Position numbers and translations under genes: made by a program | From: Diplonema japonicum | Lineage: Eukaryota; Protista; Euglenozoa: Diplonemea | Length of the DNA: 64,000 nt | Direction: 5' to 3' | Assembly (NCBI GenBank): GCA_964019335.1 | Contig: OZ025724.1 | Span: forward strand, 397,001-461,000 | Notes under the pieces: generated by a model | Told to the model about the DNA's origin: nothing | Database searches by the model: none | The model's input: the letters and a program-made list of their open reading frames with translations, nothing else | Shown: positions 28,869 through 42,323 of the stretch, one piece after another | How the letters are laid out: every line of letters begins with the position of its first letter | How positions within the stretch are numbered: the first letter of the stretch is position 1

Positions 28869-28874
<6 letters not shown>

Positions 28875-30605
28875 CTCAACACCTGCGATGCCTGCTGCCT
28901 TGTCCCTTGCGATCTGGGCAACCTTCTTCACAGCGGCCTTGAAGGCTGGACCCCTCTCTGTGTAGTAGGCTTCGAGGGCGGCCTCCATGTCGAAGGGAGG
29001 CAGGTCGCTCTTGGAGACGATGGGGAGGCTGAGGTAGGAGGACTTGATGTGCACCGTGTTCTGGGCCAACAGCTGCTTCCCCTCGAAGTCTTCCGTGAGG
29101 GGGAGCCCGTTGTTCGGGTTGGGCTGGAAGCGTGGGGCGTTCGACGATGACACTGAGAGGCGCACCCTGTGGCCCTTCGGGATGATGTACGAGGTGTTCC
29201 ACATGCTGATCTCCACACCGTACACGGTCCCAGGAACCATCGGCTTCGGCGCCACCCCTCCTGTCGTCCCGTCCCTCCACCTCATCCGTGCGATCCCGTC
29301 GTTGATGAGCAGAGCCCGCCCGTCTGGGTACAGGTGCGTCAGCTTCGCCGTGAAGTCCGTGTCTGTCGCGTTGCTCTCCACCTCCAGCCAGGCCCGCAGG
29401 GGCCCCGTCATCACCAGGTCCTCCCCCAGAGGGCTCGACGCGAACACCAGAACATCCGTCCGGTTCTGCTCCACCACCCGCTGGTCCATCGCCCCACACT
29501 TGATCATCAGGTTGTTGCCCCCTCGTGTCTCCACAGGCCTCGACGGGTCGTACACATAGGAAAGTGGCGCCTCCTCTGTAGCCTGCTGCTCCGACAGCAC
29601 CCCTCCACTCCTCAAATAGTACTTCCTCTCCGTGAAGGACGGGAACCTCTCCACAGTGCTCCAGTAGTTCCCAGGCCCGCTCTTGTCCATGCCCCCAGAT
29701 GAGTCCGCCGACCCCAGCACGAACAGCGTGATGCCCCTGATCAGTTCGGGTACCTTCCCCCCTGCGAAGGTGTCAAGTGCCATGGCAGCTGCCAGTTCCG
29801 ACTGAGAGCTCGCAGAATCGTACACAGGACAGCCCCAGATTTGGCAGTGTCCACAAGGACCTACCACCATGTAAGTCTTGCTGGGCCCTTCATTGTAACA
29901 GTCGTAGGCTGCCAGGTTGCCTTGCAAAAAGATGTCGTACCACCCAGCTTGGAGTATGGCAGGGAAGTCAACCAGATCAGCACACTTCCCTGTCATGTTC
30001 ACGGGGTTCCACCACTCTCCTGGGAATTCATTTGCACGTGCTTCATGTCTCAAAGCTGGGAACTGCCTGGGGAAGATCGCAGCAAGCCAGCCATTCGTGA
30101 GGGCGTCTCTGAAGGCCCCACCGGGGAACACAAAGTTATGAGGCAGCACTGATGCCCACATGACGAACTGCTTCTTCAGCCACTGTGGCTTGTCCATCAC
30201 GGAGAAGAAAGAGCCCAGTCCGTCCGAGGAGACACCTGTTTGGTAGACGTCGCCGTTGGCCCAAGGCTGGCCTGCCAACCACCTGAAAGAGTCGTAGCTG
30301 TCATTACCTGAGGTCCTCCACAAGGAGAAGTCCTGACCTTTCGAGTCGCCACTCCCACGCATGTCTTGCCTCACTGCACAGTAGTCGGGGCCCAGTGCCT
30401 CCTTCATCGCCACTACGATCTCCTCTGTCCCATGGTGCGTGTAGGTGCTCGTCTCGAAAAGGATTGTCTTCTTCGTGCTCCCCTTGTCCAGGTCGCAGTT
30501 GATCCACGTCGACAGGTTGAACCCATCACGCATCGTGATCATCACCTTCTGCTCCTCGCATAATGCTGTGCACAGCAGCGCAGCCACAGCGGTCGCTCGC
30601 AACAT
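28869..30605 (-). CDS. Secreted CocE/NonD family serine hydrolase, copy 2
   Basis: ATG at 30605, 578 aa; matches copy 1 except for a central divergent block. Confidence 0.9.
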
Positions 30606-30761
30606 TTTCACTTCGTTTACAATCAACTGTCAATAGGAGGTGAACATCCATATGTACAAAGAAAAAAAAACCCAAGAAATGCTTAAAAAGAAAACTGAAA
30701 CATAGTCAGTTAGCTATAGGAACACATGACACATAAGTAGTGAACCCTGAAATGTTAACTT

Positions 30762-33700
30762 TTATCCAGGACCTTCTACTAAATAGTTGGTGTTCTGGAA
30801 AGGTGGATAACCACACTCGGTATTCGGTTGTAGCCCATGGTTTTGAGCTGGTTGGGACACTTCTGGTGGCTGGGAGAACCCAGGTTGGTACTGTGGCATG
30901 TACCCTACTGGATATACTCCCTGCTGTGTATAGCTCTGGGGTTGGTCAACTGGAAGCGGCTGCCCGGATACAGGTGACATGTGCTGTGGAACTGATGGCG
31001 AAGTTGGGTCCTGGTGCTGTGGCGTGTACTCAGCTGGATATACTTCCTGCTGTGTATAATTTTGTGACTGGTTCAGCGGAATAGCTTCCTGATAATGCGT
31101 ATAACTTTGCGGATATACTCCCTGCTGTGTATAGCTCTGGGGTTGGTCAACTGGAAGCGGCTGCCCGGATACAGGTGACACGTGCTGTGGAACTGATGGC
31201 GAAGTTGGGTCCTGGTGCTGTGGCGTGTACTCAGCTGGATATACTTCCTGCTGTGTATAATTTTGTGACTGGTTCAGCGGAATAGCTTCCTGATAATGCG
31301 TATAACTTTGCGGATATACTGTTGGTATGTGCTGCTCCAATAGTTCGACACGGTGTGTGAGCTGCTTGACGATGTCTTCCCATTGCTTATCTCTCTTCAT
31401 CAGCAGTTCAATGGCAGCGCGTGTGTCTGATACTTGTGAATCGATAGTTGGTTGACCATGCTCCACGGACTGCCAGTTGCCGAGATGCGGGTTTACTTGG
31501 TGTGCAATGCTAGGAAAGTGCGATGCATCAACTTGTGTCTGTGGAGATGTACCAGTAGCACGAACGTTCACGTGTGGAGGGTTTAGTTGTGGGTGCACGT
31601 CGGGAGGGGCTCTTACTTTTTTAATTTTCCTCATTACAGGTGTGTGCTCCACATCTGTGACTTGATATTGTGCAGTGGCCACTGGCAAGGTCTCACGTGT
31701 TAGGCCGCCTGCCGAAGACTGTGCTGTAGTTGCCATTGGTGTCAAGTTGCTTGCAGAACCGGCCGAAAGAGGTACTGAGGGATCCATGCTGGCAGTATTT
31801 GAGAGCAAATCGGGAACTGGGGATCGTGCTGCCTGAACTGGAAGCGTTTGCCCATTGGATACAGGTGGCACGTGCTGTGGAACTACACTGGATGTCGAAG
31901 TTGAGCTTGGCGCCACCGCTGCCGTTGTTTGGGACATTGTTGGGACAGAGGTGGGAATTGCCGTCCGTGTGAGGGTGTCAGAAACTGCTGATGTGGGTGG
32001 CGTAGCTGTAGTTTGCATTCTTACTAGTGCCGAAGTAAGGGGCTGTGTTGGAGCAACTGTGGAAGGTGCCAACGTGTCGGGGGACTGTGTTGCGGGGGTT
32101 GTTGGAGCGACTGTGGAAGGTGCCAGGGTGTTAGGGGACGGTGTTGCAAGCGCATTGACGTAGGGGAAGGGTGCTGCTGGGGCTGCCGTTGATGACAAGG
32201 GTGTCGGCGGAGCTAGAGGCTCTGTAGGTGAGTCAAATACATAATCCATAGATCTGAGCTGGCTCCTTGTGACCTCCCGAAGTTTACTATTTGACGCGTT
32301 GACTGCTGCACTCGGAAGTGCTTCAGTTGCTGAGACATTGGGTTCAGCTGCCATAGTCACTGTCGTATGTACACTCTCTGCAGCTTCGGGGATCGTCTCC
32401 TCTCTTTTACTTGGAGAGAGCCCGGCTGATTTCTGCAAGTTCTCCGCCGTGTTGTCCGGTTCAAAAAAATCTAAAACCTTTTTCCCCTTTTTCTTCTTCT
32501 TCGTCCCACTCTGTTCAACACCACCAGTAACGATCTTTGTGTCAAGGATCGTCTCTTCTCTTTTACTTGCCGGAGAAGGCCCGGCTGATTCCTGCAAGTT
32601 CTCCGCCTCGTTGTCTGGCTCAAAAATATCTAAAACCTTTTTCCCCTTTTTCTTCTTCTTCGTCCCACTCTGTTCAACACCACCAGTAACGATCTTTGTG
32701 TCAACTCTTGTTGGGGATGGTTGTTCCTCTACTATCCTGGCACGCTCCCTGTCTCCACATGACTCACCCCACATGTCTAAAACTGCCTGCACCGCTTGGT
32801 CGCATGTGTCCTCGCTTGTGTAGTAACTGCAGTATTGCTTCGCGGCTTCCGGCTCGAGCATCTTGACTACTTCTATTTTGAACTTCTGTTCAACTCTACT
32901 GTGCCGCTCTACGTACAGCAGCATTTCGCCATGCTGCCAAAGCTCTTTCCTGTCGCTTCCAATTGTGACCTCGAACATTTTATTAAACGTATCGCCTGCA
33001 TAGACACTGTATGGTTCGGTCCATTCGTTCTGCTTTTTTTCGTAGTCGGCAAAAGAAACCGTAATACGTTTGACGTCGCCTAAAGTGATAGCAGATGAAT
33101 ACAGGGCATCGATATTCGGTCCTTCGAATGTGTCCTCTTTCTGCACTTCCACATTTTCGGGAAGAGTTGCCGGGTGCCAGAACCCATCCCCAGAGGTACA
33201 TTTGTGGTGATAGCTCATCATATATGTCGGGTGTCTTAAGCTCGCCAGCCGCAGCATGTCCATGTGTGGAACCGGCACCCCGTTGGTGTGGTGCACAGGC
33301 TTCTCGTCATCGAAGTTGTAAAGCAGCTCTGGCTTCACGTCAGGGCTGCCTGGTTTAGTGTGCAGGTAGATCTTCTTCTGATGCACAGGATACCCCTTTG
33401 GTCTGGGCGGGTCGACATCTTCGTCGAACTTGTCACTTAAGTACATTCTCAGCTTCCTGCTGACGAACATACCTGCATCGATGTAATCGGCCCATTTTTT
33501 CTCCAAGTGTGCTTTGAAGGCTTCTTCTAGCTGGCACTCTTTAATTGCTTTAAACGCTTTTTTGGCATAACTTTTTAGTTTTATACATTCCTCGCATTTG
33601 AAGATTCTGATATTAGGTTCATAGTATTCTGCAGTTTTTGGTTCCTTCTGGGCACATCCTTCACATCTCATGTTTTCCAGAACACTGAGTTTGTACTTCG

Positions 33701-36700
33701 GACCCTCGTGCAGCGACACATAGTCCTCCTCGATAGTGCAAAACTCCTTTTGCAGATCACAGAGCAGTGAATAGATATCTGCAGCCCACATCGGGATGAA
33801 CGGCCAATGCATGTGCTGCGATGCTTTGTCTGGTCTACTGATATCAAGCAGGATTGTCATGTTGTAGTGATTCGGGATCTTGTCTGCGACTAAGCGGTGG
33901 ATGATCTCTGCTATGGTCCATGTGCCGTACTTCGGGTGGTGGGGGAAGACGATCTCCTCAGAGGATATCCCGTCTAGATCAATAGCCAGCCGTGACATGA
34001 GTGATACAGCCTCATTCGTGTACCCAACGACGCTTCGGGTAAGCGCCTCCGTCATCCTGGTGTGCACTTCAGTGCTTGTGAAGCACCTGCTGTATGATGA
34101 CTGCATGCCTTGGAACCTGAAGTGCGTTGTCCATGCTGGTTTGTTCTTCTTCAAATCGATGGTCTTCAGCCCGTGCAGGATAGAGACAGCCCCTGTGTCC
34201 TTCGCACCCATCTTCGTCACTTTCGCCTTTGTGCCTTGCTTCGCCTTCTGCTCGTTGTATGATGCTAGCTGCGATTCTTCAAACAGCTTTCCGCTGAATG
34301 TGAACACTGGGCAGTCCTCAGGGAGGGTCTTCATCTTGTACAGATTTCCCAAGCGTGTGTCCTGCCTGCCGTACTTCGCAAAGAGGTACCGTACCCTCTC
34401 ATGCAGTGTTGCCAGACCCATGTCCAGGTACATCCCGCCAAGGAGGGACTCCAAGAGGTCACCATGCACCTTTTCGTTGCGTTCAGCGAGAGGAGTGACA
34501 CCGAGCACAAGAGAAGACCTGTTCTCGAAGAGCTTCTTTGCGATGGGCAGCAGGCCTGCGTCTTTGTACTCGTCACCGTGGCCGTTGGTAACTGTCGTTG
34601 TGAAGTACGTGATGTGTGTTGTCCATTCCAGAGGGTTGTCATGTTTATCAATAGTGTGACAGTCACACGCCACACAAAGGTCCAGGGCAGCGTCACCGAC
34701 AAATTCCTGGCGGTTGAACTTCACTGTGTTAGGCCGCAGAGCATCGGTGACATGGCTAGTGTTTGTGTACTGTGAGTGAGTGCCTTCTAGTAAATGAGGT
34801 ACAAGATCACTAGGCCACTGCTGCCTCTTAAGAAAGAGCATTACGTTCTTGTCTTCTAAATCTTTTACAGTAAACTCGTATTGCTTTTCCTTAGTTACCG
34901 CTTCAATGGCTTCGCGTACCCCGTCCCATGCCACGCGACTGAGTTCATAGTGCGGCATTGTCTCACCGGCTTCGTACCTCCGCATGTCATCGTCAATCAG
35001 CTGTACCAACATGTTGAGCTCACACCTCTCCATCGCCTTGGCACTACTAGGCCCCTGCTCACACTTAGTCACGTATTTTTTATGATTCTCTTTGAGCATC
35101 TCTGGATCGATGTTTATCGCTTTTTCGCCGTCGTCCCTATGCCAATATCTCATGGTTGGGAGGTAAACTTCTCTCTTGGTCGACTGTACTTCTTGAATGT
35201 GAGTGTTATCTTCGAACCGCACCAGCACGATGGGATCGGTCCTGTTATGCACTTTGCATTTGCGAAGCACCCATCCCTCCCGGAGTAGGTCCCTGACATC
35301 TAAATACACGTGGTAGTCGAGCTTGCCATAGATCGTCTCCGACTCCCAATAGTCCTCCATTGCGTCGACAGTACAACGCGTGGCGAGAACTACCTTGCAG
35401 TAGGGGGCACACTTGATCCCTACTTTTTGGTTCTTATTTGCGGCAGTGATCCTCTCGATGTTTGTGACCGAATGGTAGAGCACGTCCTCGAGACCATGCT
35501 GCTTCATGTACTGCTCCAGGACTTCCTCATCCGTATTGTCGAACTCCAGCTTCTCGTAAACCTTGTCACTCTCCTCGAGGTTAACTCTGCTGTCGCTAGA
35601 GTGGTGGTATAGTGCCCTGCCCTTCCCTTCTTTGAAGTCCAGTCGTCCCAACACATCGTGCATAGACATGAATTCGGCAAGCGCCTCCTCCGAGGCAGCC
35701 GGCTCACCACCCTCTTTGAGCTGTGCTACGATTAAATCCAAGGGCACCCACCCATTGGTTTCAAAGTCGACTTTGTTTTCTTCCGATAGATCAAATTTGT
35801 CAACAATTCCCTTCTCTCCCCGAAAGATCACTTTTACATGCTTCCAGACATTTTTTGGATTTAGTGGAAACTCGCCGCGTTCCTCCTGAGGAAGGCCATT
35901 CTCACTTTTAATCCTCTTCTCCCTGGGGATCACTATGTCGGAATCTGCAGTTACTTGAGCATCTTGTTTTGCAATTTTCATCTCACGATCTAGGTACATT
36001 GTGATGGCCATTTCTTCGGCGTAAGAAGGATCGTCGCTTTTGTGGGGACACTCATAGACCACTTTGTTGTTAGCGAATATACTTGCTTGGCCGTCTTTGT
36101 ATTTGCACTCCAGCTCCTGAAAGTAGTGCTTAAAGATGACATGGTGAACTCTTTTTGTCAAGATCCTTTTCGCAGAAACCTTACTATCTTGCAACCCAAC
36201 ACGTATCAGTATATTCTTCTGCTTCTTGATGCTCAGAGTGATCTCGCAACTGGTTTTCCCGTCCTTCTCTACGTACTTGTCACCGTTGTTTACCACACAG
36301 TAATGCTTCACTAGCTGTGTCCCATACAAGTTGCCTAGCGACTGCTCGCTGTGGCACGACAAGTAGCGCTTGTGGAGGACGCAAGCGCAGGCTTGTAGAT
36401 CGGTATGGCCCAAGCAGCTAAGGAGGACATAGCCAGTGGACACACAAATCTTTCTTGTCGTGGAAGAAGCTAAAGGGGACATGTTCCAATCCCTCGTGAA
36501 AAGGCTGTCGCAGTTCCTGTTAGCCATCAGCTCCATGTGATATTCTGCAAGTTTCCCAACTTTACTCGGAAAGCTGTCGTGCAACCATACCGCGCAGATA
36601 AGCTTCATGAACCTTATCCCGCACCTCTCGTGGCTCTTGAAACATTCCTCTGACTGTGCCGCTTCTATAAATTGCTGCGCCGCCTCCTCCGCCACACCTG

Positions 36701-36770
36701 GTGGTATGTCATCTTGTGTCAGGAAGTCCACCACATTCACCTTCTCCACTTGCCTCGGGGGCTCTGCCAT
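30762..36770 (-). CDS. 2002-aa multidomain protein: Tpt1/KptA-like + RNase III + AEP (PrimPol-like) primase-polymerase + low-complexity tail
   Basis: Tpt1-like 'NGWVPLD..GRLDF..RALYHHS..LYHSVT..VYLDV' (about 35200-35850); RNase III 'RQEFVGDAAL..GDLLESLLGG' (about 34370-34820); AEP 'AIDLD', 'KASQHMH', 'YIDAGMF..RKLRM' (about 33400-34000). Confidence 0.8.
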   Translation of the reverse strand: MAEPPRQVEKVNVVDFLTQDDIPPGVAEEAAQQFIEAAQSEECFKSHERCGIRFMKLICAVWLHDSFPSKVGKLAEYHMELMANRNCDSLFTRDWNMSPLASSTTRKICVSTGYVLLSCLGHTDLQACACVLHKRYLSCHSEQSLGNLYGTQLVKHYCVVNNGDKYVEKDGKTSCEITLSIKKQKNILIRVGLQDSKVSAKRILTKRVHHVIFKHYFQELECKYKDGQASIFANNKVVYECPHKSDDPSYAEEMAITMYLDREMKIAKQDAQVTADSDIVIPREKRIKSENGLPQEERGEFPLNPKNVWKHVKVIFRGEKGIVDKFDLSEENKVDFETNGWVPLDLIVAQLKEGGEPAASEEALAEFMSMHDVLGRLDFKEGKGRALYHHSSDSRVNLEESDKVYEKLEFDNTDEEVLEQYMKQHGLEDVLYHSVTNIERITAANKNQKVGIKCAPYCKVVLATRCTVDAMEDYWESETIYGKLDYHVYLDVRDLLREGWVLRKCKVHNRTDPIVLVRFEDNTHIQEVQSTKREVYLPTMRYWHRDDGEKAINIDPEMLKENHKKYVTKCEQGPSSAKAMERCELNMLVQLIDDDMRRYEAGETMPHYELSRVAWDGVREAIEAVTKEKQYEFTVKDLEDKNVMLFLKRQQWPSDLVPHLLEGTHSQYTNTSHVTDALRPNTVKFNRQEFVGDAALDLCVACDCHTIDKHDNPLEWTTHITYFTTTVTNGHGDEYKDAGLLPIAKKLFENRSSLVLGVTPLAERNEKVHGDLLESLLGGMYLDMGLATLHERVRYLFAKYGRQDTRLGNLYKMKTLPEDCPVFTFSGKLFEESQLASYNEQKAKQGTKAKVTKMGAKDTGAVSILHGLKTIDLKKNKPAWTTHFRFQGMQSSYSRCFTSTEVHTRMTEALTRSVVGYTNEAVSLMSRLAIDLDGISSEEIVFPHHPKYGTWTIAEIIHRLVADKIPNHYNMTILLDISRPDKASQHMHWPFIPMWAADIYSLLCDLQKEFCTIEEDYVSLHEGPKYKLSVLENMRCEGCAQKEPKTAEYYEPNIRIFKCEECIKLKSYAKKAFKAIKECQLEEAFKAHLEKKWADYIDAGMFVSRKLRMYLSDKFDEDVDPPRPKGYPVHQKKIYLHTKPGSPDVKPELLYNFDDEKPVHHTNGVPVPHMDMLRLASLRHPTYMMSYHHKCTSGDGFWHPATLPENVEVQKEDTFEGPNIDALYSSAITLGDVKRITVSFADYEKKQNEWTEPYSVYAGDTFNKMFEVTIGSDRKELWQHGEMLLYVERHSRVEQKFKIEVVKMLEPEAAKQYCSYYTSEDTCDQAVQAVLDMWGESCGDRERARIVEEQPSPTRVDTKIVTGGVEQSGTKKKKKGKKVLDIFEPDNEAENLQESAGPSPASKREETILDTKIVTGGVEQSGTKKKKKGKKVLDFFEPDNTAENLQKSAGLSPSKREETIPEAAESVHTTVTMAAEPNVSATEALPSAAVNASNSKLREVTRSQLRSMDYVFDSPTEPLAPPTPLSSTAAPAAPFPYVNALATPSPNTLAPSTVAPTTPATQSPDTLAPSTVAPTQPLTSALVRMQTTATPPTSAVSDTLTRTAIPTSVPTMSQTTAAVAPSSTSTSSVVPQHVPPVSNGQTLPVQAARSPVPDLLSNTASMDPSVPLSAGSASNLTPMATTAQSSAGGLTRETLPVATAQYQVTDVEHTPVMRKIKKVRAPPDVHPQLNPPHVNVRATGTSPQTQVDASHFPSIAHQVNPHLGNWQSVEHGQPTIDSQVSDTRAAIELLMKRDKQWEDIVKQLTHRVELLEQHIPTVYPQSYTHYQEAIPLNQSQNYTQQEVYPAEYTPQHQDPTSPSVPQHVSPVSGQPLPVDQPQSYTQQGVYPQSYTHYQEAIPLNQSQNYTQQEVYPAEYTPQHQDPTSPSVPQHMSPVSGQPLPVDQPQSYTQQGVYPVGYMPQYQPGFSQPPEVSQPAQNHGLQPNTECGYPPFQNTNYLVEGPG
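30910..31320 (-). repeat. 201-bp coding tandem duplication (Q/P/Y-rich)
   Basis: Two near-identical 67-aa units 'VYPQSYTHYQEAIPLNQ...'. Confidence 0.85.
32390..32703 (-). repeat. 159-bp coding tandem duplication containing a basic NLS-like motif
   Basis: Two copies of 'DTKIVTGGVEQSGTKKKKKGKKVLD'. Confidence 0.85.
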
Positions 36771-36877
36771 GCCCAGACCTGTCTGTGCAAGGTAACACGC
36801 TGTAATAGCCTTTGCATATTTGAAATATAAGCACGCCAGAAGGCTGTGTAGATAAAAATAAAAAGGAGTAGTTGAAT

Positions 36878-36914
<37 letters not shown>

Positions 36915-36950: not shown

Positions 36951-39737
36951 CTACAGCTCTCCGCAGAGGATCCAGAAGTCAGGGTTATCACCTGGGCCCA
37001 TCTCTTTAATCCAATCGCTAGAGGCTGTCTGTAGGGTGTTGCGATTGGTGCAGAACATCTCTGCGAGCTTAACAAGGATATCGTGCAGGATTGCAGGCGT
37101 GAGTGAAGTGTTGCTTGCCAGGCGCTCGTACTCTGCTTGGATGGTTGGAGACACGAACTGCGGTTTATCTGTCACGATATTGGTATCATCCGCATCATCG
37201 TCGATCACCTCCAGCACATCTGCTTGCCTCGCTGAGTTGCCTCCTTCCCAGCGGCATGTGCTCGAGCACCCGTCATTGTTGTTCCTGTTACCATCGTCGC
37301 ACTGCTCAGCAGGGTCGGTCGTACCGTCCCCGCAGCATGTCTTCTTGCTCAAGTATCCTGCCACCAGCCATTCCCAGTCGGGGGGGCTGTTCCCTTCCAC
37401 TTGCAGTGCTAAGTTGTCCACCCCATATGTGTACGAGTGCCCATCGGGGAGGTCGGTAATATCCCACATGTCTCGAATGGTTACACGCGTCCCGAACAAG
37501 TTCCACAACTTGCCTCCGTTAGAGTTATACACGAAGGGCATTTCAGAATCAAGCTGCACTCTGGACAAAGGGATGATCCCCGACGAGGCACCGTTGACAG
37601 CAGGGTAGTAGTGCTTCTGCGCGAGGTTTGACTTGTCAACCTTATCATATTCGTGGTAGTCTTGCCACAAGGCGTACAGCCTATCGATATTGGCATGATG
37701 CACGAAGAAGAGTGGGTCGTCTGGCGACCTGCGTGTCGCCATTTGGCCCCCAATAAAGTTGTGGGGTGCTGCATGTGGGCCAGCTTCAAGGCGTGGGCGG
37801 AAGTCTTTGTACTTGTGGTGTGCAGTGATAACTGTCCCGACCTCTGCTTCGCTTGCGAAGGCGTAGGTGTTAACGTTGCCATTCGACCTCTTCAAACACG
37901 TCCCCTCTGAAGTGGCCCAGCTGGCGGCGATGCCCGAGTTGACGCACTGCAGTGTCGACGTCATGTGGTGCTCAAAGTCGCCGAAAGTCTTGTGCCTCAG
38001 CGGCGTGGACTTGCGCTCATCATCTGCATCGCGCTCCCAGTCCCAGTATGGTACAGTGATACACTCGTAGCCAGTGATACTCCTCAAGAGATTCTCGTAC
38101 TGCAGCAGATACCACCTGTGCCAAGGAAGGAATGCAGACGTGCTGTGCGCATATTTCATCATGTAGCTGTGCGTGTCGACCAACTTGTTGTAGTCCCACG
38201 GCTTCTGTCTCTTCAGTTCGTCGACTGCATTGACGTAACGCATCCTCTCGCTGCACAGAAGGGTGCTGTAGGATTTCCTCACTCTCGGAGGGCAAGTGTT
38301 GGGCAATGGAGGGGGTGGCGGCGGAGGGGGCTCAATAGGTACACCTCCAGTGTGGTACTTCACCACCAGCTTAGCTCCCACGCCATCTCCGTCGATTGAC
38401 TCAGCCACTCTCCTACGATTCCCTACCACATTCCTTATAACCACAGACACGGCATTGCCAGCTGACCACCCCTGCTTGTCAATGACTGCTTGGAGTTCCG
38501 CTGCCATGTCAGGCGACTCGAAAGTAGTGCCCACTGACCAAACTGTGCTAGTTTTCCATGGCACACCAGCCCCCAACGACCTGCCCGAGGGACGCCTCGA
38601 AGACGACCAACTTCGTGAATTTGTTGAGTCATCGAACGCCAGCTCTAAGTGGATTGCACCTGTTTTTCTCTCGTCGCACTTGAAGACTACTTTCGCTTCT
38701 ACAACAGTAGCGCCTTTGGGTACGTTCACACGCCTCCAGCGGATGCCCACCTTCTGCGCTGTGCCTTTCTCGGTGGCCAGCTCAAGGTCGGAGCTGTCGT
38801 AGATCATGCCGTTGGGCTTCTCCTCAACATCGTCGTTGCAGTTGGCGATGTACGACGTACAGGTGACTACGTCAACCTTTGTAGGCACAGGGGTGGGCTG
38901 TGGAGTAGGCTGCGGAGTGGGAAGCGGTGTCGGTAAAGGCGTGGGTGCTGGTGTCGGAGGTGGAGTGGGCCGTGGGGTAGGGTTTGGTGTAGGTCCAGGT
39001 GTAGGTGCCGGTGTTGGGGGTTTAGTAGGCTGTGGGGTGGGAGGTGTCGGTGTTGGGCTGGGGGTGTACTCAAGCTCGTGATCTGCGCACTCGCGACAGA
39101 TCTCAGGCGGTGGGTGCGCTTGAAAGCGACGCGGGCACCAGTTGTCCTTACATTCCACATTACCGTTGTCCCACAAGCACAAGGGAAGCCTGCCGCACTC
39201 CTGAGGATCAACTGCAGAGCTACATAGCACAGACCTCGCGGAGCCTGCCATACCAAGGAACCTGGCAGCACTTGTAGTGGTAATAGAAGTGGATTCTCCG
39301 GGGGATAGCTGCTTGCGGAAAATGCTCATCTTGTGTCCCTTTGCGACAAGCCTGAAAGATGGTGCACACGCACTTCCGATCCACCCTTCCGCTAGCAGTG
39401 CTGCAGGCAGCCCCCCTATCTGATCACAAGGCGGGCAGTGATATAGGAAAACATAGATCTCGCAAACGTATCCACCACTCAGCCCAGCGGGACAGGTGAA
39501 CGTAATGGTGGTGTCAGCGTTGAGGGGTCCCTGTAGTACCCAGCCCTTCATGTCAGGCTCCTTTAAGTTGCTTGGGATGCTGTAAAATCTCGAGTCTGGG
39601 AGATCACCCCATGCATTCATGTTCTCGGTCATGGTCACTTCTTGCGGTACCCAACCAGGGTTGGGAGCGATCGTTATATCTGGGTACTCGAGAGCATGTA
39701 CCGCACAAAAAGCTAATCCTAGTAGTAGAAACCGCAT
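36951..39737 (-). CDS. Secreted multidomain tyrosinase (type-3 copper)
   Basis: Signal peptide; CuA 'H....AH..SAFLPWHR', CuB 'PHAAPHNFIGG..SPDDPLFFVHHANID'; Pro/Thr linkers; 'CGDG..EQCDDGN..GCSSTC' Cys repeat. Confidence 0.9.
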   Translation of the reverse strand: MRFLLLGLAFCAVHALEYPDITIAPNPGWVPQEVTMTENMNAWGDLPDSRFYSIPSNLKEPDMKGWVLQGPLNADTTITFTCPAGLSGGYVCEIYVFLYHCPPCDQIGGLPAALLAEGWIGSACAPSFRLVAKGHKMSIFRKQLSPGESTSITTTSAARFLGMAGSARSVLCSSAVDPQECGRLPLCLWDNGNVECKDNWCPRRFQAHPPPEICRECADHELEYTPSPTPTPPTPQPTKPPTPAPTPGPTPNPTPRPTPPPTPAPTPLPTPLPTPQPTPQPTPVPTKVDVVTCTSYIANCNDDVEEKPNGMIYDSSDLELATEKGTAQKVGIRWRRVNVPKGATVVEAKVVFKCDERKTGAIHLELAFDDSTNSRSWSSSRRPSGRSLGAGVPWKTSTVWSVGTTFESPDMAAELQAVIDKQGWSAGNAVSVVIRNVVGNRRRVAESIDGDGVGAKLVVKYHTGGVPIEPPPPPPPPLPNTCPPRVRKSYSTLLCSERMRYVNAVDELKRQKPWDYNKLVDTHSYMMKYAHSTSAFLPWHRWYLLQYENLLRSITGYECITVPYWDWERDADDERKSTPLRHKTFGDFEHHMTSTLQCVNSGIAASWATSEGTCLKRSNGNVNTYAFASEAEVGTVITAHHKYKDFRPRLEAGPHAAPHNFIGGQMATRRSPDDPLFFVHHANIDRLYALWQDYHEYDKVDKSNLAQKHYYPAVNGASSGIIPLSRVQLDSEMPFVYNSNGGKLWNLFGTRVTIRDMWDITDLPDGHSYTYGVDNLALQVEGNSPPDWEWLVAGYLSKKTCCGDGTTDPAEQCDDGNRNNNDGCSSTCRWEGGNSARQADVLEVIDDDADDTNIVTDKPQFVSPTIQAEYERLASNTSLTPAILHDILVKLAEMFCTNRNTLQTASSDWIKEMGPGDNPDFWILCGEL

Positions 39738-40970: not shown

Positions 40971-42323
40971 TTACCTTTCCTTCCTTTCCAAAAGCTGCAC
41001 GATGCAAGGGTAGCCCCCTAACAAGGCTTCATCTTTTGCCATCTCCCTCGCAGCAGGTGTGGTGCCACTATCTAGAATCAGCTTCACAGAAGCCCTGTCG
41101 CCCCTGCCTGCAGCCTGAGCCAGTGCTGTTACCCCTCTTCTGTTGACGATTGTTGAGTTGGCTTTGTACTCAAGTAGCAACCGTGTAACTGCATCGTTTT
41201 TGGCAAGGTGGAGGGCTGTGTTGTTGCTCCTAGCACACTTCACGTTGGTGTCAGCCCTGTTTTCTAACAGGATCTGTAAGATGCTCACGAAGCCTTTCTC
41301 GGCAGCACACACCAGGGCAGGGTTCTCGTCGCTGCTCCAAGTACCTAAGTCAGGGTCCGCTCCTTGTTCTAAAAGTAGACACACAGCAGCCTCTTTGCAG
41401 TTATTAACAGCACCCTGCAGTGGTGTGCCTGTGTCGCTTATAGCGTTAGGGTCCGCCTTCTTATTAAGCAACATATGCATGACACTCAGGTATCCTTGTG
41501 AGGATGCAGCGTGCAGGGCAGTACATCTCGTGCGATCTTCCAGGTTCGGGTTTGCATTATGTTTCAGAAGCAGCCGAACAACCTTTGTGTGTCCCCGTTG
41601 GGCCGCTAGGTGAAGTGCCGACTCGTCTGCTTCATTTGTGATGTCAGGATTACTGTTGTTCAGTAGCAGCATGTCGACGATGCAGGTGTGGCCCTCACGT
41701 GCTGCATGGTGGAGTGCTGTCTCGCCGTCTTCAGTGCTTCTCAAGTCGCTTTTGGCACCGTTTTCAAGCAGTAACTTCACAACACCGCTGTGGCCTTCGT
41801 AGGCAGCATTGCATAGTGGTGTGGCCCCGTTGTGCATTGTGTTGACAATATCCCGCTGCAATCCCAGCAAGAAGGCAGCACAGTCGTAGAGGCCATGCAA
41901 TGCAGAGACTGCTAACAGCCCCTGGAGACAATCATTGGTGTACCGGTTGCACTTCACCATGTACTCAACTAGCTGTCTGTACTTTTCATCTTGCTTCCTA
42001 ACGTGTTCTTGCAACAAGGGTGCACTGCTTTCTAAATCTCGAAGGAGATGAATGGCCTCCTTGTTACCATATCCCAAGGTGTCGAGATCTATCGCTGCCT
42101 GCTCTTTAGGAGACAAAACAACCTGCACCTGCTCATCACCAACAAAGTACTCGTCTAGCAGTCTGTCCCCTTCTAACTCTTCGTCGCAGTGCACTAGAAT
42201 AAAAGCATCAGGATGGAACCCCCTTAGGTGTGACACCTTCACCTTCAGCTCATTGACAGTGCTGTTCTCTGTGTCAATAGTTTCGATGCCCCCAGGGTAC
42301 TTGATGTGAAGAACTACAGACAT
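40971..42323 (-). CDS. Ubiquitin-like domain + ankyrin repeat protein
   Basis: N-terminal Ubl ('TVNELKVKV..L..CDEELEGDRLLDEY'); about 8 ankyrin repeats (TPL/TALH.AA..GH). Confidence 0.9.
   Translation of the reverse strand: MSVVLHIKYPGGIETIDTENSTVNELKVKVSHLRGFHPDAFILVHCDEELEGDRLLDEYFVGDEQVQVVLSPKEQAAIDLDTLGYGNKEAIHLLRDLESSAPLLQEHVRKQDEKYRQLVEYMVKCNRYTNDCLQGLLAVSALHGLYDCAAFLLGLQRDIVNTMHNGATPLCNAAYEGHSGVVKLLLENGAKSDLRSTEDGETALHHAAREGHTCIVDMLLLNNSNPDITNEADESALHLAAQRGHTKVVRLLLKHNANPNLEDRTRCTALHAASSQGYLSVMHMLLNKKADPNAISDTGTPLQGAVNNCKEAAVCLLLEQGADPDLGTWSSDENPALVCAAEKGFVSILQILLENRADTNVKCARSNNTALHLAKNDAVTRLLLEYKANSTIVNRRGVTALAQAAGRGDRASVKLILDSGTTPAAREMAKDEALLGGYPCIVQLLERKER

What the first reader, a model, noticed from the sequence alone, without database searches (positions are those of the whole stretch)
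33200..35850. Tpt1/KptA-RNase III-primase/polymerase (AEP) fusion: a candidate RNA cut, heal and synthesize enzyme
Seen: one 2002-aa ORF carries a Tpt1-like domain (LRH appears as FRG, so possibly inactive or binding-only), a single RNase III domain with its acidic residues (EFVGD, DLLE), and AEP motifs I-III (DLD, SQH, YID). A CxxC..CxxC zinc ribbon is inserted between AEP motifs II and III, and the tail has duplicated NLS-like motifs. Established: RNase III cuts dsRNA, Tpt1 removes 2'-phosphates or ADP-ribosylates ends using NAD+, and AEPs synthesize primers. Inference: a non-canonical Dicer-like enzyme in which the AEP might replace RdRP in small-RNA/TE silencing or RNA repair. I recall RNase III-AEP fusions noted computationally in kinetoplastids but cannot verify this, and I know of no functional characterisation.
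Basis: partly seen in the sequence, partly recalled or inferred. Interest (0 to 1): 0.85.

Follow-up and report, generated by a model that had tools for sequence, protein, structure and literature searches.

The report
Diplonemid Dicer-like 1 with Tpt1 and primase domains
This expressed gene is a diplonemid-type version of the unusual trypanosome Dicer (DCL1), and its RNase III, Tpt1-like and primase-polymerase domains are real, but Pfam already catalogues this combination for kinetoplastid Dicers, so it is a new member of a known and biochemically unexplored kind.

Summary
The ORF at window 30762-36770 (minus strand, 2002 aa) carries a two-lobed Tpt1/KptA fold at about aa 300-540. The 19 matches at Foldseek E <= 0.001 are all Tpt1/KptA, best E 5.6e-7. 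It also carries one catalytically complete RNase III domain (aa 664-800). An AEP primase-polymerase domain follows at about aa 880-1200, with VIA-align Z 9.6 to ASFV PrimPol and 8.8 to human PrimPol, and the DxD, H and D motifs intact.

The architecture is not new. T. brucei DCL1 hits the Pfam families La_HTH_kDCL, KptA_kDCL ('KptA in kinetoplastid DICER') and PPL4 ('Prim-pol 4'), plus RNase III. A kinetoplastid DCL1 profile matches the window protein at E 1e-23 in three colinear blocks.

The closest relatives are Diplonema japonicum and D. ambulator Dicer-like proteins. Euglena also has the fusion, so it probably dates to the euglenozoan ancestor.

The gene is transcribed. Contigs from three runs carry a spliced leader joined about 12 nt before the ATG.

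My own residue analysis:
- The Tpt1-like module keeps only two of the four catalytic residues, so it is probably an RNA-end binder.
- The N-terminal RNase III-like domain is catalytically dead.
- The AEP active site is conserved across Euglenozoa, so it is probably an active polymerase of untested role.

The scan had already noted this same stretch once before (s1-861307). That is the same DNA read in another window, not a second locus.

The parts
30762..36770 (-). Complete ORF of 2002 aa plus stop: euglenozoan Dicer-like 1 (DCL1-type) protein
   Evidence: ORF list and translation. It is single copy in the 62.5-Mb genome. Homologs are Diplonema japonicum and D. ambulator (44-45% identity), Rhynchopus, Namystynia, D. 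papillatum 'Dicer, partial', Euglena gracilis and T. rangeli 'Dicer 1'.
36783..36784 (-). AG spliced-leader trans-splice acceptor. The exon starts at 36782 or 36783, giving a 5' UTR of about 12 nt before the ATG at 36770.
   Evidence: Contigs of runs X7, X8 and X9 stop matching the genome at 36783. They continue with letters whose reverse complement is AGCTACAGTTTCTGTACTTTATT, a euglenozoan spliced-leader 3' end by my recollection. The minus strand reads ...ttgcacAG|acaggtctgggcATG.
36351..36653 (-). N-terminal RNase III-like domain ('IIIa', about aa 40-140), catalytically degenerate
   Evidence: It aligns with the N-terminal domains of Namystynia P0005 (aa 70-168) and P0008 (aa 52-104), which Pfam scores as RNase III (alignment). 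In the window protein the positions of D44, D107 and E110 (Aquifex numbering, from memory) are non-acidic. That placement is my reading of the alignment.
35151..35873 (-). Two-lobed Tpt1/KptA-like module (about aa 300-540). Pfam splits the kinetoplastid counterpart into La_HTH_kDCL and KptA_kDCL.
   Evidence: AF2 pLDDT 79.6. All 19 Foldseek PDB matches at E <= 0.001 are Tpt1/KptA, E 5.6e-7 to 6.5e-4. Family profile against PDB gives Tpt1 6ede at E 0.02. hhalign of the diplonemid against the kinetoplastid module gives 96.5% probability, E 7e-10. R317, R376, R385 and H390 are invariant in 15 sequences.
34371..34781 (-). Catalytic RNase III domain ('IIIb', aa 664-800) with E689, D693, D771 and E774
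   Evidence: Pfam Ribonuclease_3 at E 4.8e-4 on the window protein (below the curated cut-off) and 2e-11 on the D. japonicum ortholog. The family profile hits plant, fly and human Dicers at up to E 3e-18. The acidic residues are at least 90% conserved.
33171..34133 (-). AEP primase-polymerase domain (about aa 880-1200; Pfam PPL4 'Prim-pol 4' in relatives). Motif I is D931/D933, motif II is H986, motif III is D1098, followed by SRKLRMYLSDK.
   Evidence: VIA-align Z 9.6 to ASFV PrimPol (206 residues aligned), Z 8.8 to human PrimPol, Z 6-7 to poxvirus D5/E5 and LigD-Pol. Foldseek top hits in PDB and BFVD are all NCLDV AEPs. Pfam AEP_C962R scores E 0.015 here and 4.2e-5 in P0001. D931, D933, H986, R1108 and D1113 are invariant in 17 euglenozoan sequences, and D1098 and K1114 are at least 90% conserved.
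33585..33665 (-). CxxC...CxxC insertion (aa 1036-1062) between AEP motifs II and III
   Evidence: CEGC at aa 1036 and CEEC at aa 1059. The insertion is present in Diplonema spp., Namystynia and D. papillatum. It is absent in Rhynchopus and replaced by a long unrelated insert in kinetoplastids. Model residues 167-250 align weakly to ArfGAP zinc fingers (Z 6.5).
32841..32987 (-). Three strands followed by a helix (about aa 1262-1310) after the AEP core; possible dsRBD-like element (inference only)
   Evidence: AF2 secondary structure shows strands at aa 1265-1270, 1274-1279 and 1282-1288 and a helix at 1293-1305, with pLDDT about 75-85. The ELW..GE.L motif is conserved in diplonemids. No Pfam dsrm hit.
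30765..32768 (-). Low-complexity P/Q/S/T-rich tail (aa 1335-2002) with two tandem duplications, each first-repeat copy carrying a KKKKKGKK stretch
   Evidence: Translation. TRF finds 159 bp x2 at 32390-32704 (92% matches) and 201 bp x2 at 30910-31320 (99%). The roughly 450-aa C-terminal domain shared by other diplonemid DCLs is missing here and was not found elsewhere in the genome.

Best explanation
The gene encodes the organism's single Dicer-like 1 protein of the euglenozoan (kinetoplastid DCL1) type.

Shown here: the protein has, in order, a degenerate RNase III-like domain, a two-lobed Tpt1/KptA-fold module, one catalytically complete RNase III domain, and an AEP/PrimPol-fold domain with an intact active site. 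A low-complexity tail follows. The gene is transcribed and SL trans-spliced. The same genome encodes three Piwi-domain proteins.

Known from kinetoplastids (papers): DCL1 is the cytoplasmic Dicer that makes siRNAs from retroposon and viral dsRNA.

Inferred mechanism, in three parts:
1. The RNase IIIb domain cuts dsRNA. The IIIa partner lacks three of the four core acidic residues, so each polypeptide offers one cutting site. Cutting both strands therefore needs either a homodimer through IIIb or two successive cuts.
2. No PAZ or helicase domain is detectable. The Tpt1-like module keeps the two phosphate-contacting arginines (R317, R376) but has lost the catalytic His, and I could not place the fourth Arg or the HGT motif. 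It most likely serves as a non-catalytic binder of a phosphorylated RNA end that positions the substrate.
3. The AEP domain is probably an active nucleotidyl transferase acting on the RNA substrate or product, for example by complementary-strand synthesis or 3' extension. Its actual reaction is unknown.
For: Orthology:
- phmmer over 1.84 billion representatives finds only 11 relatives, among them T. rangeli 'Dicer 1' and D. papillatum 'Dicer, partial'. All that could be named are euglenozoan.
- A kinetoplastid DCL1 HMM hits the window protein at E 1.1e-23 in three colinear blocks.
- T. brucei DCL1 carries La_HTH_kDCL, KptA_kDCL, Ribonuclease_3 and PPL4 in the same order.
- hhalign of the Tpt1-like module gives 96.5% probability.

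Folds. Catalytic residues. Expression and SL junction. Piwi-domain genes in the genome.

DCL1 function in trypanosomatids: PMC3359990 and bioRxiv 10.64898/2026.08.09.743808. The latter also reports blunt-ended vsiRNA duplexes, which it calls unusual for canonical Dicer cleavage.
Against: - The window protein does not itself reach the Pfam KptA_kDCL, La_HTH_kDCL or PPL4 models. Membership rests on profile, fold and colinearity evidence.
- The assignment of the fourth Tpt1 arginine and of the HGT motif rests on a MAFFT alignment plus AF2 secondary structure, not on a residue-level structural superposition.
- The AEP model is only moderately confident overall (pLDDT 66).
- No activity of the AEP or Tpt1-like domain has been measured in any member that I could find.
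- The IIIa-dead conclusion depends on an alignment of a very divergent domain.
Confidence: 0.8

Rival explanations
1. The AEP domain is a built-in RNA-templated RNA polymerase. It would replace or supplement the cellular RdRP, so that one polypeptide both makes dsRNA from target transcripts and dices it (coupled synthesis and dicing, amplifying siRNAs).
For: The AEP catalytic residues are invariant or nearly so from euglenids to trypanosomes, which argues for a retained enzymatic role. The domain is always fused directly after the active RNase III domain. Kinetoplastids are reported to lack RdRP (supplement of PMC10161547). Pfam RdRP found nothing in this genome.
Against: The RdRP search had no positive control, because the control genomes are prokaryotic. 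It therefore does not show absence. D. papillatum is reported to have both this Dicer type and an RdRP, so the AEP is not a simple replacement. The nearest structural relatives, PrimPol and the NCLDV primases, are DNA-templated enzymes. No biochemical data exist.
Confidence: 0.2
2. The Tpt1-like module is catalytically active. It would use NAD+ to remove 2'-phosphates or to ADP-ribosylate phosphorylated RNA ends of Dicer substrates or products. This is the 'heal' step of the first reader.
For: The complete two-lobed Tpt1 fold is present. Two tetrad arginines (R317, R376) and the RA..H motif (R385, H390) are invariant. From memory, Tpt1 enzymes can also cap 5'-phosphate ends with ADP-ribose. 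PDB entries 9ld*, listed, show KptA bound to DNA and ADP-ribose.
Against: The catalytic His of LRH is replaced in every family member: G here, D, T, A, F or L elsewhere. The fourth Arg and the HGT motif have no conserved counterpart. PF01885 does not score this region. The genome-wide PF01885 search reported only two other loci, one of them with canonical HGT and RRHVHF motifs.
Confidence: 0.1
3. The accessory domains are evolutionary relics. The AEP and Tpt1-like domains would be only structural scaffolds in a Dicer whose sole chemistry is RNase III cleavage.
For: The Tpt1 catalytic set is already eroded. The region between AEP motifs II and III is highly variable in length and content. The window protein has also lost the C-terminal domain shared by other diplonemid DCLs, which shows the architecture tolerates loss.
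Against: The metal-binding DxD, the His and the motif III Asp, together with the SRKLRMYL(S/N)DK segment, are conserved across very deep divergences. That is hard to explain without catalysis.
Confidence: 0.1
4. It is not an RNAi enzyme but an organellar nucleic-acid enzyme, for example a mitochondrial primase plus an RNA-processing RNase III, as with kinetoplastid PRI1/PRI2 and the editing endonucleases.
For: From memory, kinetoplastids use AEP primases in kDNA replication and pair active with degenerate RNase III domains in RNA-editing endonucleases.
Against: The protein is homologous over its whole length to DCL1, which is described as the cytoplasmic RNAi Dicer in T. brucei. I saw nothing resembling a mitochondrial presequence at the N-terminus MAEPPRQVEK..., though I ran no predictor.
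Confidence: 0.03

Closest known systems
Kinetoplastid Dicer-like 1 (TbDCL1, Tb927.8.2370 from memory; here P0015, T. rangeli 'Dicer 1' P0011). Pfam architecture: La_HTH_kDCL (PF18177) + KptA_kDCL (PF18176) + Ribonuclease_3 + PPL4 (PF18188).
   Same: Same domain order: degenerate N-terminal RNase III-like domain, Tpt1-like module, active RNase III, AEP. Both lack PAZ and helicase domains. The conserved residues are the same: R317, R376, R385 and H390 in the Tpt1-like module, and DxD, H, D and SRKLRMYLxDK in the AEP.
   Different: Only about 14-24% identity. The window protein does not reach the Pfam models trained on kinetoplastids. It has a hairpin insertion in the Tpt1 C-lobe, a CxxC...CxxC insert instead of the long kinetoplastid insert in the AEP, and a low-complexity duplicated tail.
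Diplonemid Dicer-like proteins (D. papillatum DpDCL1 and DpDCL2, D. japonicum, D. ambulator, Rhynchopus humris, Namystynia), reported in the supplement of PMC10161547
   Same: These are the closest relatives: 37% (BLASTP) to 45% (phmmer) identity over aa 1-1330, with all domains shared. That paper states that diplonemids other than D. papillatum have a single Dicer resembling DpDCL1, as found here.
   Different: The window protein lacks the roughly 450-aa C-terminal domain that the D. japonicum, D. ambulator, Rhynchopus and D. papillatum proteins share. The supplement's text does not mention KptA or Prim-pol domains.
Tpt1/KptA RNA 2'-phosphotransferase (PF01885; PDB 8tfi, 1wfx, 6ede, 9ldg)
   Same: Two-lobed fold over about 220 aligned columns. 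The Arg of LRH, the Arg of KRF and the IRA..GHS-like motif are kept.
   Different: The catalytic His and the fourth Arg are absent. The HGT motif is altered and there is an extra beta-hairpin. The module is embedded in a 2002-aa protein.
PrimPol / NCLDV-herpesvirus AEP clade (human PrimPol 5l2x, ASFV C962R 8iqb, vaccinia D5, MPXV E5)
   Same: AEP fold, with motifs I-III and the basic segment after motif III.
   Different: No conserved UL52-type zinc finger is visible after the core and there is no helicase partner. The domain is fused to an RNase III domain, and its template and substrate are unknown.
Canonical Dicer (human, Drosophila Dcr-2, plant DCLs, Giardia Dicer)
   Same: The RNase III domain is most similar to the Dicer IIIb domain (E 3e-18 to DCL3). 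There are two RNase III-like domains in one chain.
   Different: No helicase, DUF283, platform or PAZ domain was detected. The first RNase III domain is catalytically degenerate. The Tpt1-like and AEP domains are additions.

Membership tests
Kinetoplastid-type Dicer-like 1 (DCL1) | Full-length sequence homology to DCL1 proteins | tested here: met
   T. rangeli 'Dicer 1' is among only 11 hits in 1.84 billion representatives. An HMM of nine kinetoplastid DCL1s hits the window protein at E 1.1e-23 in three colinear blocks.
Kinetoplastid-type Dicer-like 1 (DCL1) | Domain order: La-HTH/KptA-like module, then RNase III, then Prim-pol 4 | tested here: met
   T. brucei DCL1 Pfam layout, compared with the fold-verified domains of the window protein at aa 300-540, 664-800 and 880-1200.
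Kinetoplastid-type Dicer-like 1 (DCL1) | Scores above the curated cut-off on Pfam PF18176, PF18177 and PF18188 | tested here: not met
   None is listed for the window protein even at E <= 1. D. japonicum P0001 reaches La_HTH_kDCL only at E 0.0014, below the cut-off. Namystynia and Euglena relatives do pass PPL4, at 26.0 and 27.9 bits against 25. The profile-profile link for the Tpt1-like module is 96.5%.
Kinetoplastid-type Dicer-like 1 (DCL1) | Produces siRNAs from dsRNA in vivo | not testable with these tools
   Only expression is shown, through SL-joined transcripts. Function is known for T. brucei and L. guyanensis orthologs.
Tpt1/KptA RNA 2'-phosphotransferase (PF01885) | Two-lobed fold (winged-helix N-lobe plus ADP-ribosyltransferase-like C-lobe) | tested here: met
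   All 19 Foldseek matches at E <= 0.001 are Tpt1/KptA, best E 5.6e-7, TM 0.53-0.62 on the target length for most of them.
Tpt1/KptA RNA 2'-phosphotransferase (PF01885) | Arg-His-Arg-Arg catalytic tetrad | tested here: not met
   R317 and R376 align with E. coli KptA R21 and R69 and are invariant. H22 aligns with G318 and is non-His in all 15 family members. No conserved Arg aligns with R125. The E. coli numbering and the roles of these residues are from memory.
Tpt1/KptA RNA 2'-phosphotransferase (PF01885) | Sequence match to the family model | tested here: not met
   PF01885 is absent from the Pfam hits. The genome-wide PF01885 search reported two other loci and not this one. PDB Tpt1 sequences reach only E 0.02-0.9.
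RNase III / Dicer | RNase III signature with the four acidic catalytic residues | tested here: met
   For domain IIIb: E689 and D693 in QEFVGD, D771 and E774 in DLLE. The family profile hits Dicers at E 3e-18. The window protein's own Pfam score of 21.3 bits is below the 27-bit cut-off.
RNase III / Dicer | Second catalytically competent RNase III domain forming the intramolecular processing centre | tested here: not met
   A homologous N-terminal domain exists; Pfam scores its counterparts in P0005 and P0008 as RNase III. In the window protein and in kinetoplastids the D44, D107 and E110 positions are not acidic. The dimer arrangement itself was not modelled.
RNase III / Dicer | PAZ/platform and helicase domains of canonical Dicers | tested here: not met
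   No such Pfam hit at E <= 1.
AEP superfamily, PrimPol / NCLDV-herpes clade | AEP catalytic fold | tested here: met
   VIA-align Z 9.6 (ASFV PrimPol, 206 aligned), 8.8 (human PrimPol), 6-7 (D5/E5, LigD-Pol), 5-6 (PriS). Foldseek top hits in PDB and BFVD are all NCLDV AEPs.
AEP superfamily, PrimPol / NCLDV-herpes clade | Motif I DxD/DxE, motif II sxH, motif III hD | tested here: met
   D931-L-D933, S984-Q-H986 and I1097-D1098. These are invariant or at least 90% conserved in 17 sequences.
AEP superfamily, PrimPol / NCLDV-herpes clade | C-terminal UL52-type zinc finger needed for priming in PrimPol | tested here: inconclusive
   No conserved Cys/His cluster follows the core in the alignment. 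The CxxC...CxxC element lies inside the domain and is not conserved in Rhynchopus or kinetoplastids. No dedicated search was run.
AEP superfamily, PrimPol / NCLDV-herpes clade | Primase or polymerase activity | not testable with these tools
   Needs biochemistry.

The most novel reading that the evidence does not exclude
The AEP domain fused behind the only active RNase III domain is an RNA-templated polymerase. It would make euglenozoan DCL1 a self-contained 'synthesize-and-dice' enzyme, a non-RdRP route to dsRNA or siRNA amplification. The eroded Tpt1 module would act as the end-measuring device that replaces PAZ.
Probability: 0.2. Interest if true: 0.8.

Novelty: new member of a known kind. 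Interest (0 to 1): 0.38.

Why it matters
Trypanosomatid DCL1 is a working Dicer that controls retroposons and Leishmania RNA viruses. No paper I could reach, including experimental ones from 2012 and 2026 and five full-text searches, discusses what its Tpt1-like and primase-polymerase domains do. Only the Pfam family names record them.

This locus adds a free-living, diplonemid-type member. Together with the Euglena sequence it shows the fusion is probably ancestral to Euglenozoa. It also shows the AEP active site has been kept throughout while the Tpt1 catalytic set has not.

That contrast tells experimenters which domain to test for chemistry (the AEP) and which for binding (the Tpt1-like module). 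The locus does not by itself reveal a new kind of system.

Tried and rejected
Literature:
- Burroughs, Ando and Aravind 2014 (PMC4066877), Iyer et al. 2005, Shi et al. 2006 (PMC1664728), Patrick et al. 2009 (PMC2764927) and Matveyev et al. 2017 (PMC5744689) are not held. The attribution of the Pfam families to that work is therefore from memory.
- Full-text searches for RNase III, Dicer or DCL1 combined with AEP, primase, Prim-Pol or KptA found nothing relevant.

Sequence searches:
- The window protein alone against Pfam and PDB gave only sub-threshold hits.
- The family profile against PDB found no AEP chain at E <= 1. The AEP call therefore rests on Pfam hits in relatives and on the fold search.
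- Foldseek E-values for the AEP model are modest, with the best at 5e-3. VIA-align was needed.

Genome searches:
- Pfam RNase III found nothing, not even this gene, so the method is too insensitive to count Dicers.
- Pfam RdRP found nothing, but no control genome rang, so that result is uninformative.

Other attempts and limits:
- The ESM Atlas on aa 1-300 gave no usable hit.
- I considered that the downstream ORF 28869-30626 might encode the missing C-terminal domain. It is an unrelated S15 peptidase.
- I considered a split or second gene copy. None was found.

Full report
**1. What is in the sequence**

Window 30762-36770 (minus strand) is one uninterrupted ORF of 2002 aa.
- FRG at aa 316-318
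- EFVGD at 689-693 and DLLE at 771-774
- DLD at 931-933, SQH at 984-986 and YID at 1096-1098
- CxxC at 1036 and 1059
- KKKKKGKK at 1371 and 1424

The flanking genes on the same strand are unrelated: a tyrosinase-domain protein, an S15 peptidase and an ankyrin/ubiquitin protein.

**2. Is the gene real and expressed?**

Contigs of three public runs (X7, X8, X9) cover the ORF in pieces and stop matching the genome at 36783. They continue with letters whose reverse complement reads AGCTACAGTTTCTGTACTTTATT. I recognise this as the 3' part of the euglenozoan spliced leader, from memory; it resembles the diplonemid and kinetoplastid SL.

The genome has an AG at 36784-36783 on the minus strand, about 12 nt upstream of the ATG at 36770. 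The mRNA is therefore SL trans-spliced, and the first ATG after the acceptor is the ORF start. A deeper run (X3) reads through this point as genomic DNA.

The gene is single copy in the 62.5-Mb assembly.

**3. Relatives**

A scan of 1.84 billion representative proteins with aa 281-1270 found only 11 relatives. The named ones are:
- Diplonema japonicum and D. ambulator, at 44-45% identity and full length
- Rhynchopus humris and Namystynia karyoxenos
- D. papillatum 'Dicer, partial' and DIPPA_00339
- Euglena gracilis
- Trypanosoma rangeli 'Dicer 1'

Searching with the T. rangeli protein returned the trypanosomatid DCL1 set, including the T. brucei protein of 1648 aa. An HMM of nine kinetoplastid DCL1s hits the window protein at E 1.1e-23. 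It does so in three colinear blocks: aa 263-377, 640-938 and 1090-1183. The protein is therefore the diplonemid-type ortholog of kinetoplastid DCL1.

The supplement of the D. papillatum genome paper already reports diplonemid DCLs. It says that other diplonemids have a single Dicer resembling DpDCL1 (PMC10161547).

**4. The architecture is already catalogued**

Pfam scores T. brucei DCL1 as follows:
- La_HTH_kDCL (PF18177, E 9e-36)
- KptA_kDCL, 'KptA in kinetoplastid DICER domain' (PF18176, E 5e-52)
- Ribonuclease_3
- PPL4, 'Prim-pol 4' (PF18188, E 3e-50)

One T. melophagium ortholog is even named 'Prim-pol 4' in NCBI. I believe these families derive from Burroughs, Ando and Aravind 2014, but that paper is not held here.

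The window protein itself does not reach these kinetoplastid-trained models, so I tested each domain independently.

**5. The Tpt1/KptA-like module (about aa 300-540)**

- An AF2 model of aa 286-570, built with 14 homologs, has pLDDT 79.6 and pTM 0.78.
- Foldseek against the PDB gives 19 matches at E <= 0.001. All are Tpt1/KptA, from E 5.6e-7 to 6.5e-4, covering both lobes over about 220 columns.
- The family profile hits Tpt1 6ede at E 0.02.
- hhalign of the diplonemid module against the kinetoplastid module gives 96.5% probability, E 7e-10.

For catalytic residues I aligned the family with E. coli KptA taken from the K-12 record:
- R317 aligns with the Arg of LRH and is invariant in 15 sequences.
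- R376 aligns with the Arg of KKRF and is also invariant.
- R385 and H390 match IRA..GHS.
- The catalytic His of LRH is G here. It is D, T, A, F or L in all other members.
- No conserved Arg aligns with the fourth tetrad residue.
- The HGT motif reads FDNT or FTGS.

The last two assignments rest on a sequence alignment plus AF2 secondary structure, not on a residue-level superposition.

The genome encodes other Tpt1-family genes. One has canonical HGT and RRHVHF motifs.

I conclude that the fold is Tpt1 but the canonical 2'-phosphotransferase chemistry is unlikely. Retention of the two phosphate-contacting arginines suggests binding of a phosphorylated RNA end. This is an inference.

**6. The RNase III domains**

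Domain IIIb (aa 664-800) has the full acidic set: E689, D693, D771 and E774. The family profile matches plant, fly and human Dicers at up to E 3e-18.

The N-terminal domain (about aa 40-140) is homologous to the N-terminal domains of Namystynia P0005 and P0008, which Pfam scores as RNase III. In the window protein, the other diplonemids and the kinetoplastids, the positions of D44, D107 and E110 are not acidic.

Each polypeptide therefore appears to have one cutting site. I detected no PAZ, platform or helicase domain.

**7. The AEP domain (about aa 880-1200)**

The AF2 model of aa 851-1330 has mean pLDDT 66, with the catalytic core at 80-96.
- Foldseek's top PDB hits are all ASFV PrimPol, D5 or E5 (best E 5e-3, prob 0.98).
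- VIA-align gives Z 9.6 to ASFV PrimPol (206 aligned), 8.8 to human PrimPol (192 aligned), 6-7 to poxvirus AEPs and LigD-Pol, and 5-6 to PriS and HSV primase.
- BFVD hits are NCLDV D5-like and C962R-like primases.
- Pfam AEP_C962R passes its cut-off in the D. japonicum ortholog, at 24.2 bits against 23. PPL4 passes in Namystynia and Euglena.
- D931, D933, H986, R1108 and D1113 are invariant in 17 euglenozoan sequences. D1098 and K1114 are at least 90% conserved.

Such conservation over this depth argues for an active nucleotidyl transferase.

The CxxC...CxxC element lies between motifs II and III. It is lineage-variable: absent in Rhynchopus and replaced in kinetoplastids. Three strands and a helix follow the core at aa 1265-1305 and could be dsRBD-like. 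That is untested.

**8. The tail**

From about aa 1335 the protein is low-complexity. It contains two tandem DNA duplications: 159 bp x2 at 92% matches and 201 bp x2 at 99%.

The roughly 450-aa C-terminal domain shared by other diplonemid DCLs is absent here and was not found elsewhere in the genome.

**9. How it most likely works**

- Shown here: identity as a DCL1-type Dicer, the folds, the residue status and expression. Three Piwi-domain genes are present in the genome.
- Known from relatives: DCL1 is the cytoplasmic Dicer for retroposon and viral dsRNA. The 2026 Leishmania preprint notes blunt-ended siRNA duplexes, which it calls unusual for canonical Dicer cleavage.
- Inferred: IIIb cuts, with the dead IIIa as a structural partner or with a IIIb homodimer. 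The eroded Tpt1 module binds an RNA end in place of PAZ. The AEP is catalytically active on the RNA substrate or product.

Whether the AEP acts as an RdRP substitute is untested. D. papillatum is reported to have both this Dicer type and an RdRP. My RdRP search of this genome was uninformative.

An earlier unchecked note in this scan (s1-864720) mentions a catalytically dead RdRP fused to a helicase elsewhere in this genome. I did not test it.

**10. Verdict**

The interpretation as an unusual Dicer-like enzyme is right. The 'heal' function is unlikely.

The architecture is already catalogued for kinetoplastid DCL1, and diplonemid DCLs are already reported. What is new here is:
- the fold-level verification
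- the extension of the full Tpt1-like, RNase III and AEP arrangement to a diplonemid-type genome and, through P0006, to Euglena
- the contrast between an eroded Tpt1 site and a preserved AEP site
- the loss of the C-terminal domain in this species

Noticed in passing
window 34770-34771 (minus strand): One contig of run X8 ends at 34770 and continues with the same spliced-leader letters (AATAAAGTACAGAAA on the plus strand), with an AG at 34771-34770. This is a possible internal alternative trans-splice acceptor just upstream of the RNase IIIb domain. The next ATG (34753) is out of frame. It is seen in one contig of one run only.
   Followed up: partly
window 30910-31320 and 32390-32704: There are two tandem duplications inside the coding tail: 201 bp x2 at 99% identity and 159 bp x2 at 92%. 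Contigs of all four laid runs fork at 31111, the repeat boundary, so the copy number of the 201-bp unit may be uncertain or polymorphic.
   Followed up: partly
P0001 about aa 1480-1964, P0002 about aa 1560-2023, and the C-termini of P0003 and P0004: Other diplonemid DCLs share a conserved C-terminal domain of about 450 aa (YVPKGP.RLYYMLG ... ITYKDL..PPCRYF) with no Pfam hit. It is missing from the window protein and was not found elsewhere in this genome.
   Followed up: partly
G000:C21:255295-255765 (L004) and G000:C100:283246-283521 (L005): There are two other Tpt1-family genes in the same genome. The C21 gene (701-aa frame) is itself divergent, with LLLK in place of LRH. The C100 match has canonical HGT and RRHVHF motifs.
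   Followed up: partly
G000:C67:478454-479350, C38:187400-188311, C35:70000-71013: Three Piwi-domain (Argonaute/Piwi) genes are present, so an RNAi effector arm exists in this organism.
   Followed up: no
window 33417-33668 (about aa 1017-1100 of the protein; model residues 167-250): The Zn-binding insertion in the AEP domain aligns weakly with ArfGAP-type zinc fingers (centaurin alpha-1 Z 6.5, ArfGAP2 Z 6.1). This may be only a common small-domain arrangement.
   Followed up: no
window 28869-30626, 36951-39737, 40971-42323 (all minus strand): The neighbours on the same strand are an S15/PepX-type peptidase, a tyrosinase-domain protein with DUF4215, and an ankyrin-repeat protein with a weak, sub-threshold N-terminal ubiquitin-family match. 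This is a head-to-tail same-strand array typical of euglenozoan polycistrons, with no functional link to the Dicer.
   Followed up: partly
window 36881-36900 (minus strand): A run of about 20 A lies on the minus strand roughly 100 nt upstream of the SL acceptor, in the intergenic region between the tyrosinase-domain gene and the Dicer gene.
   Followed up: no
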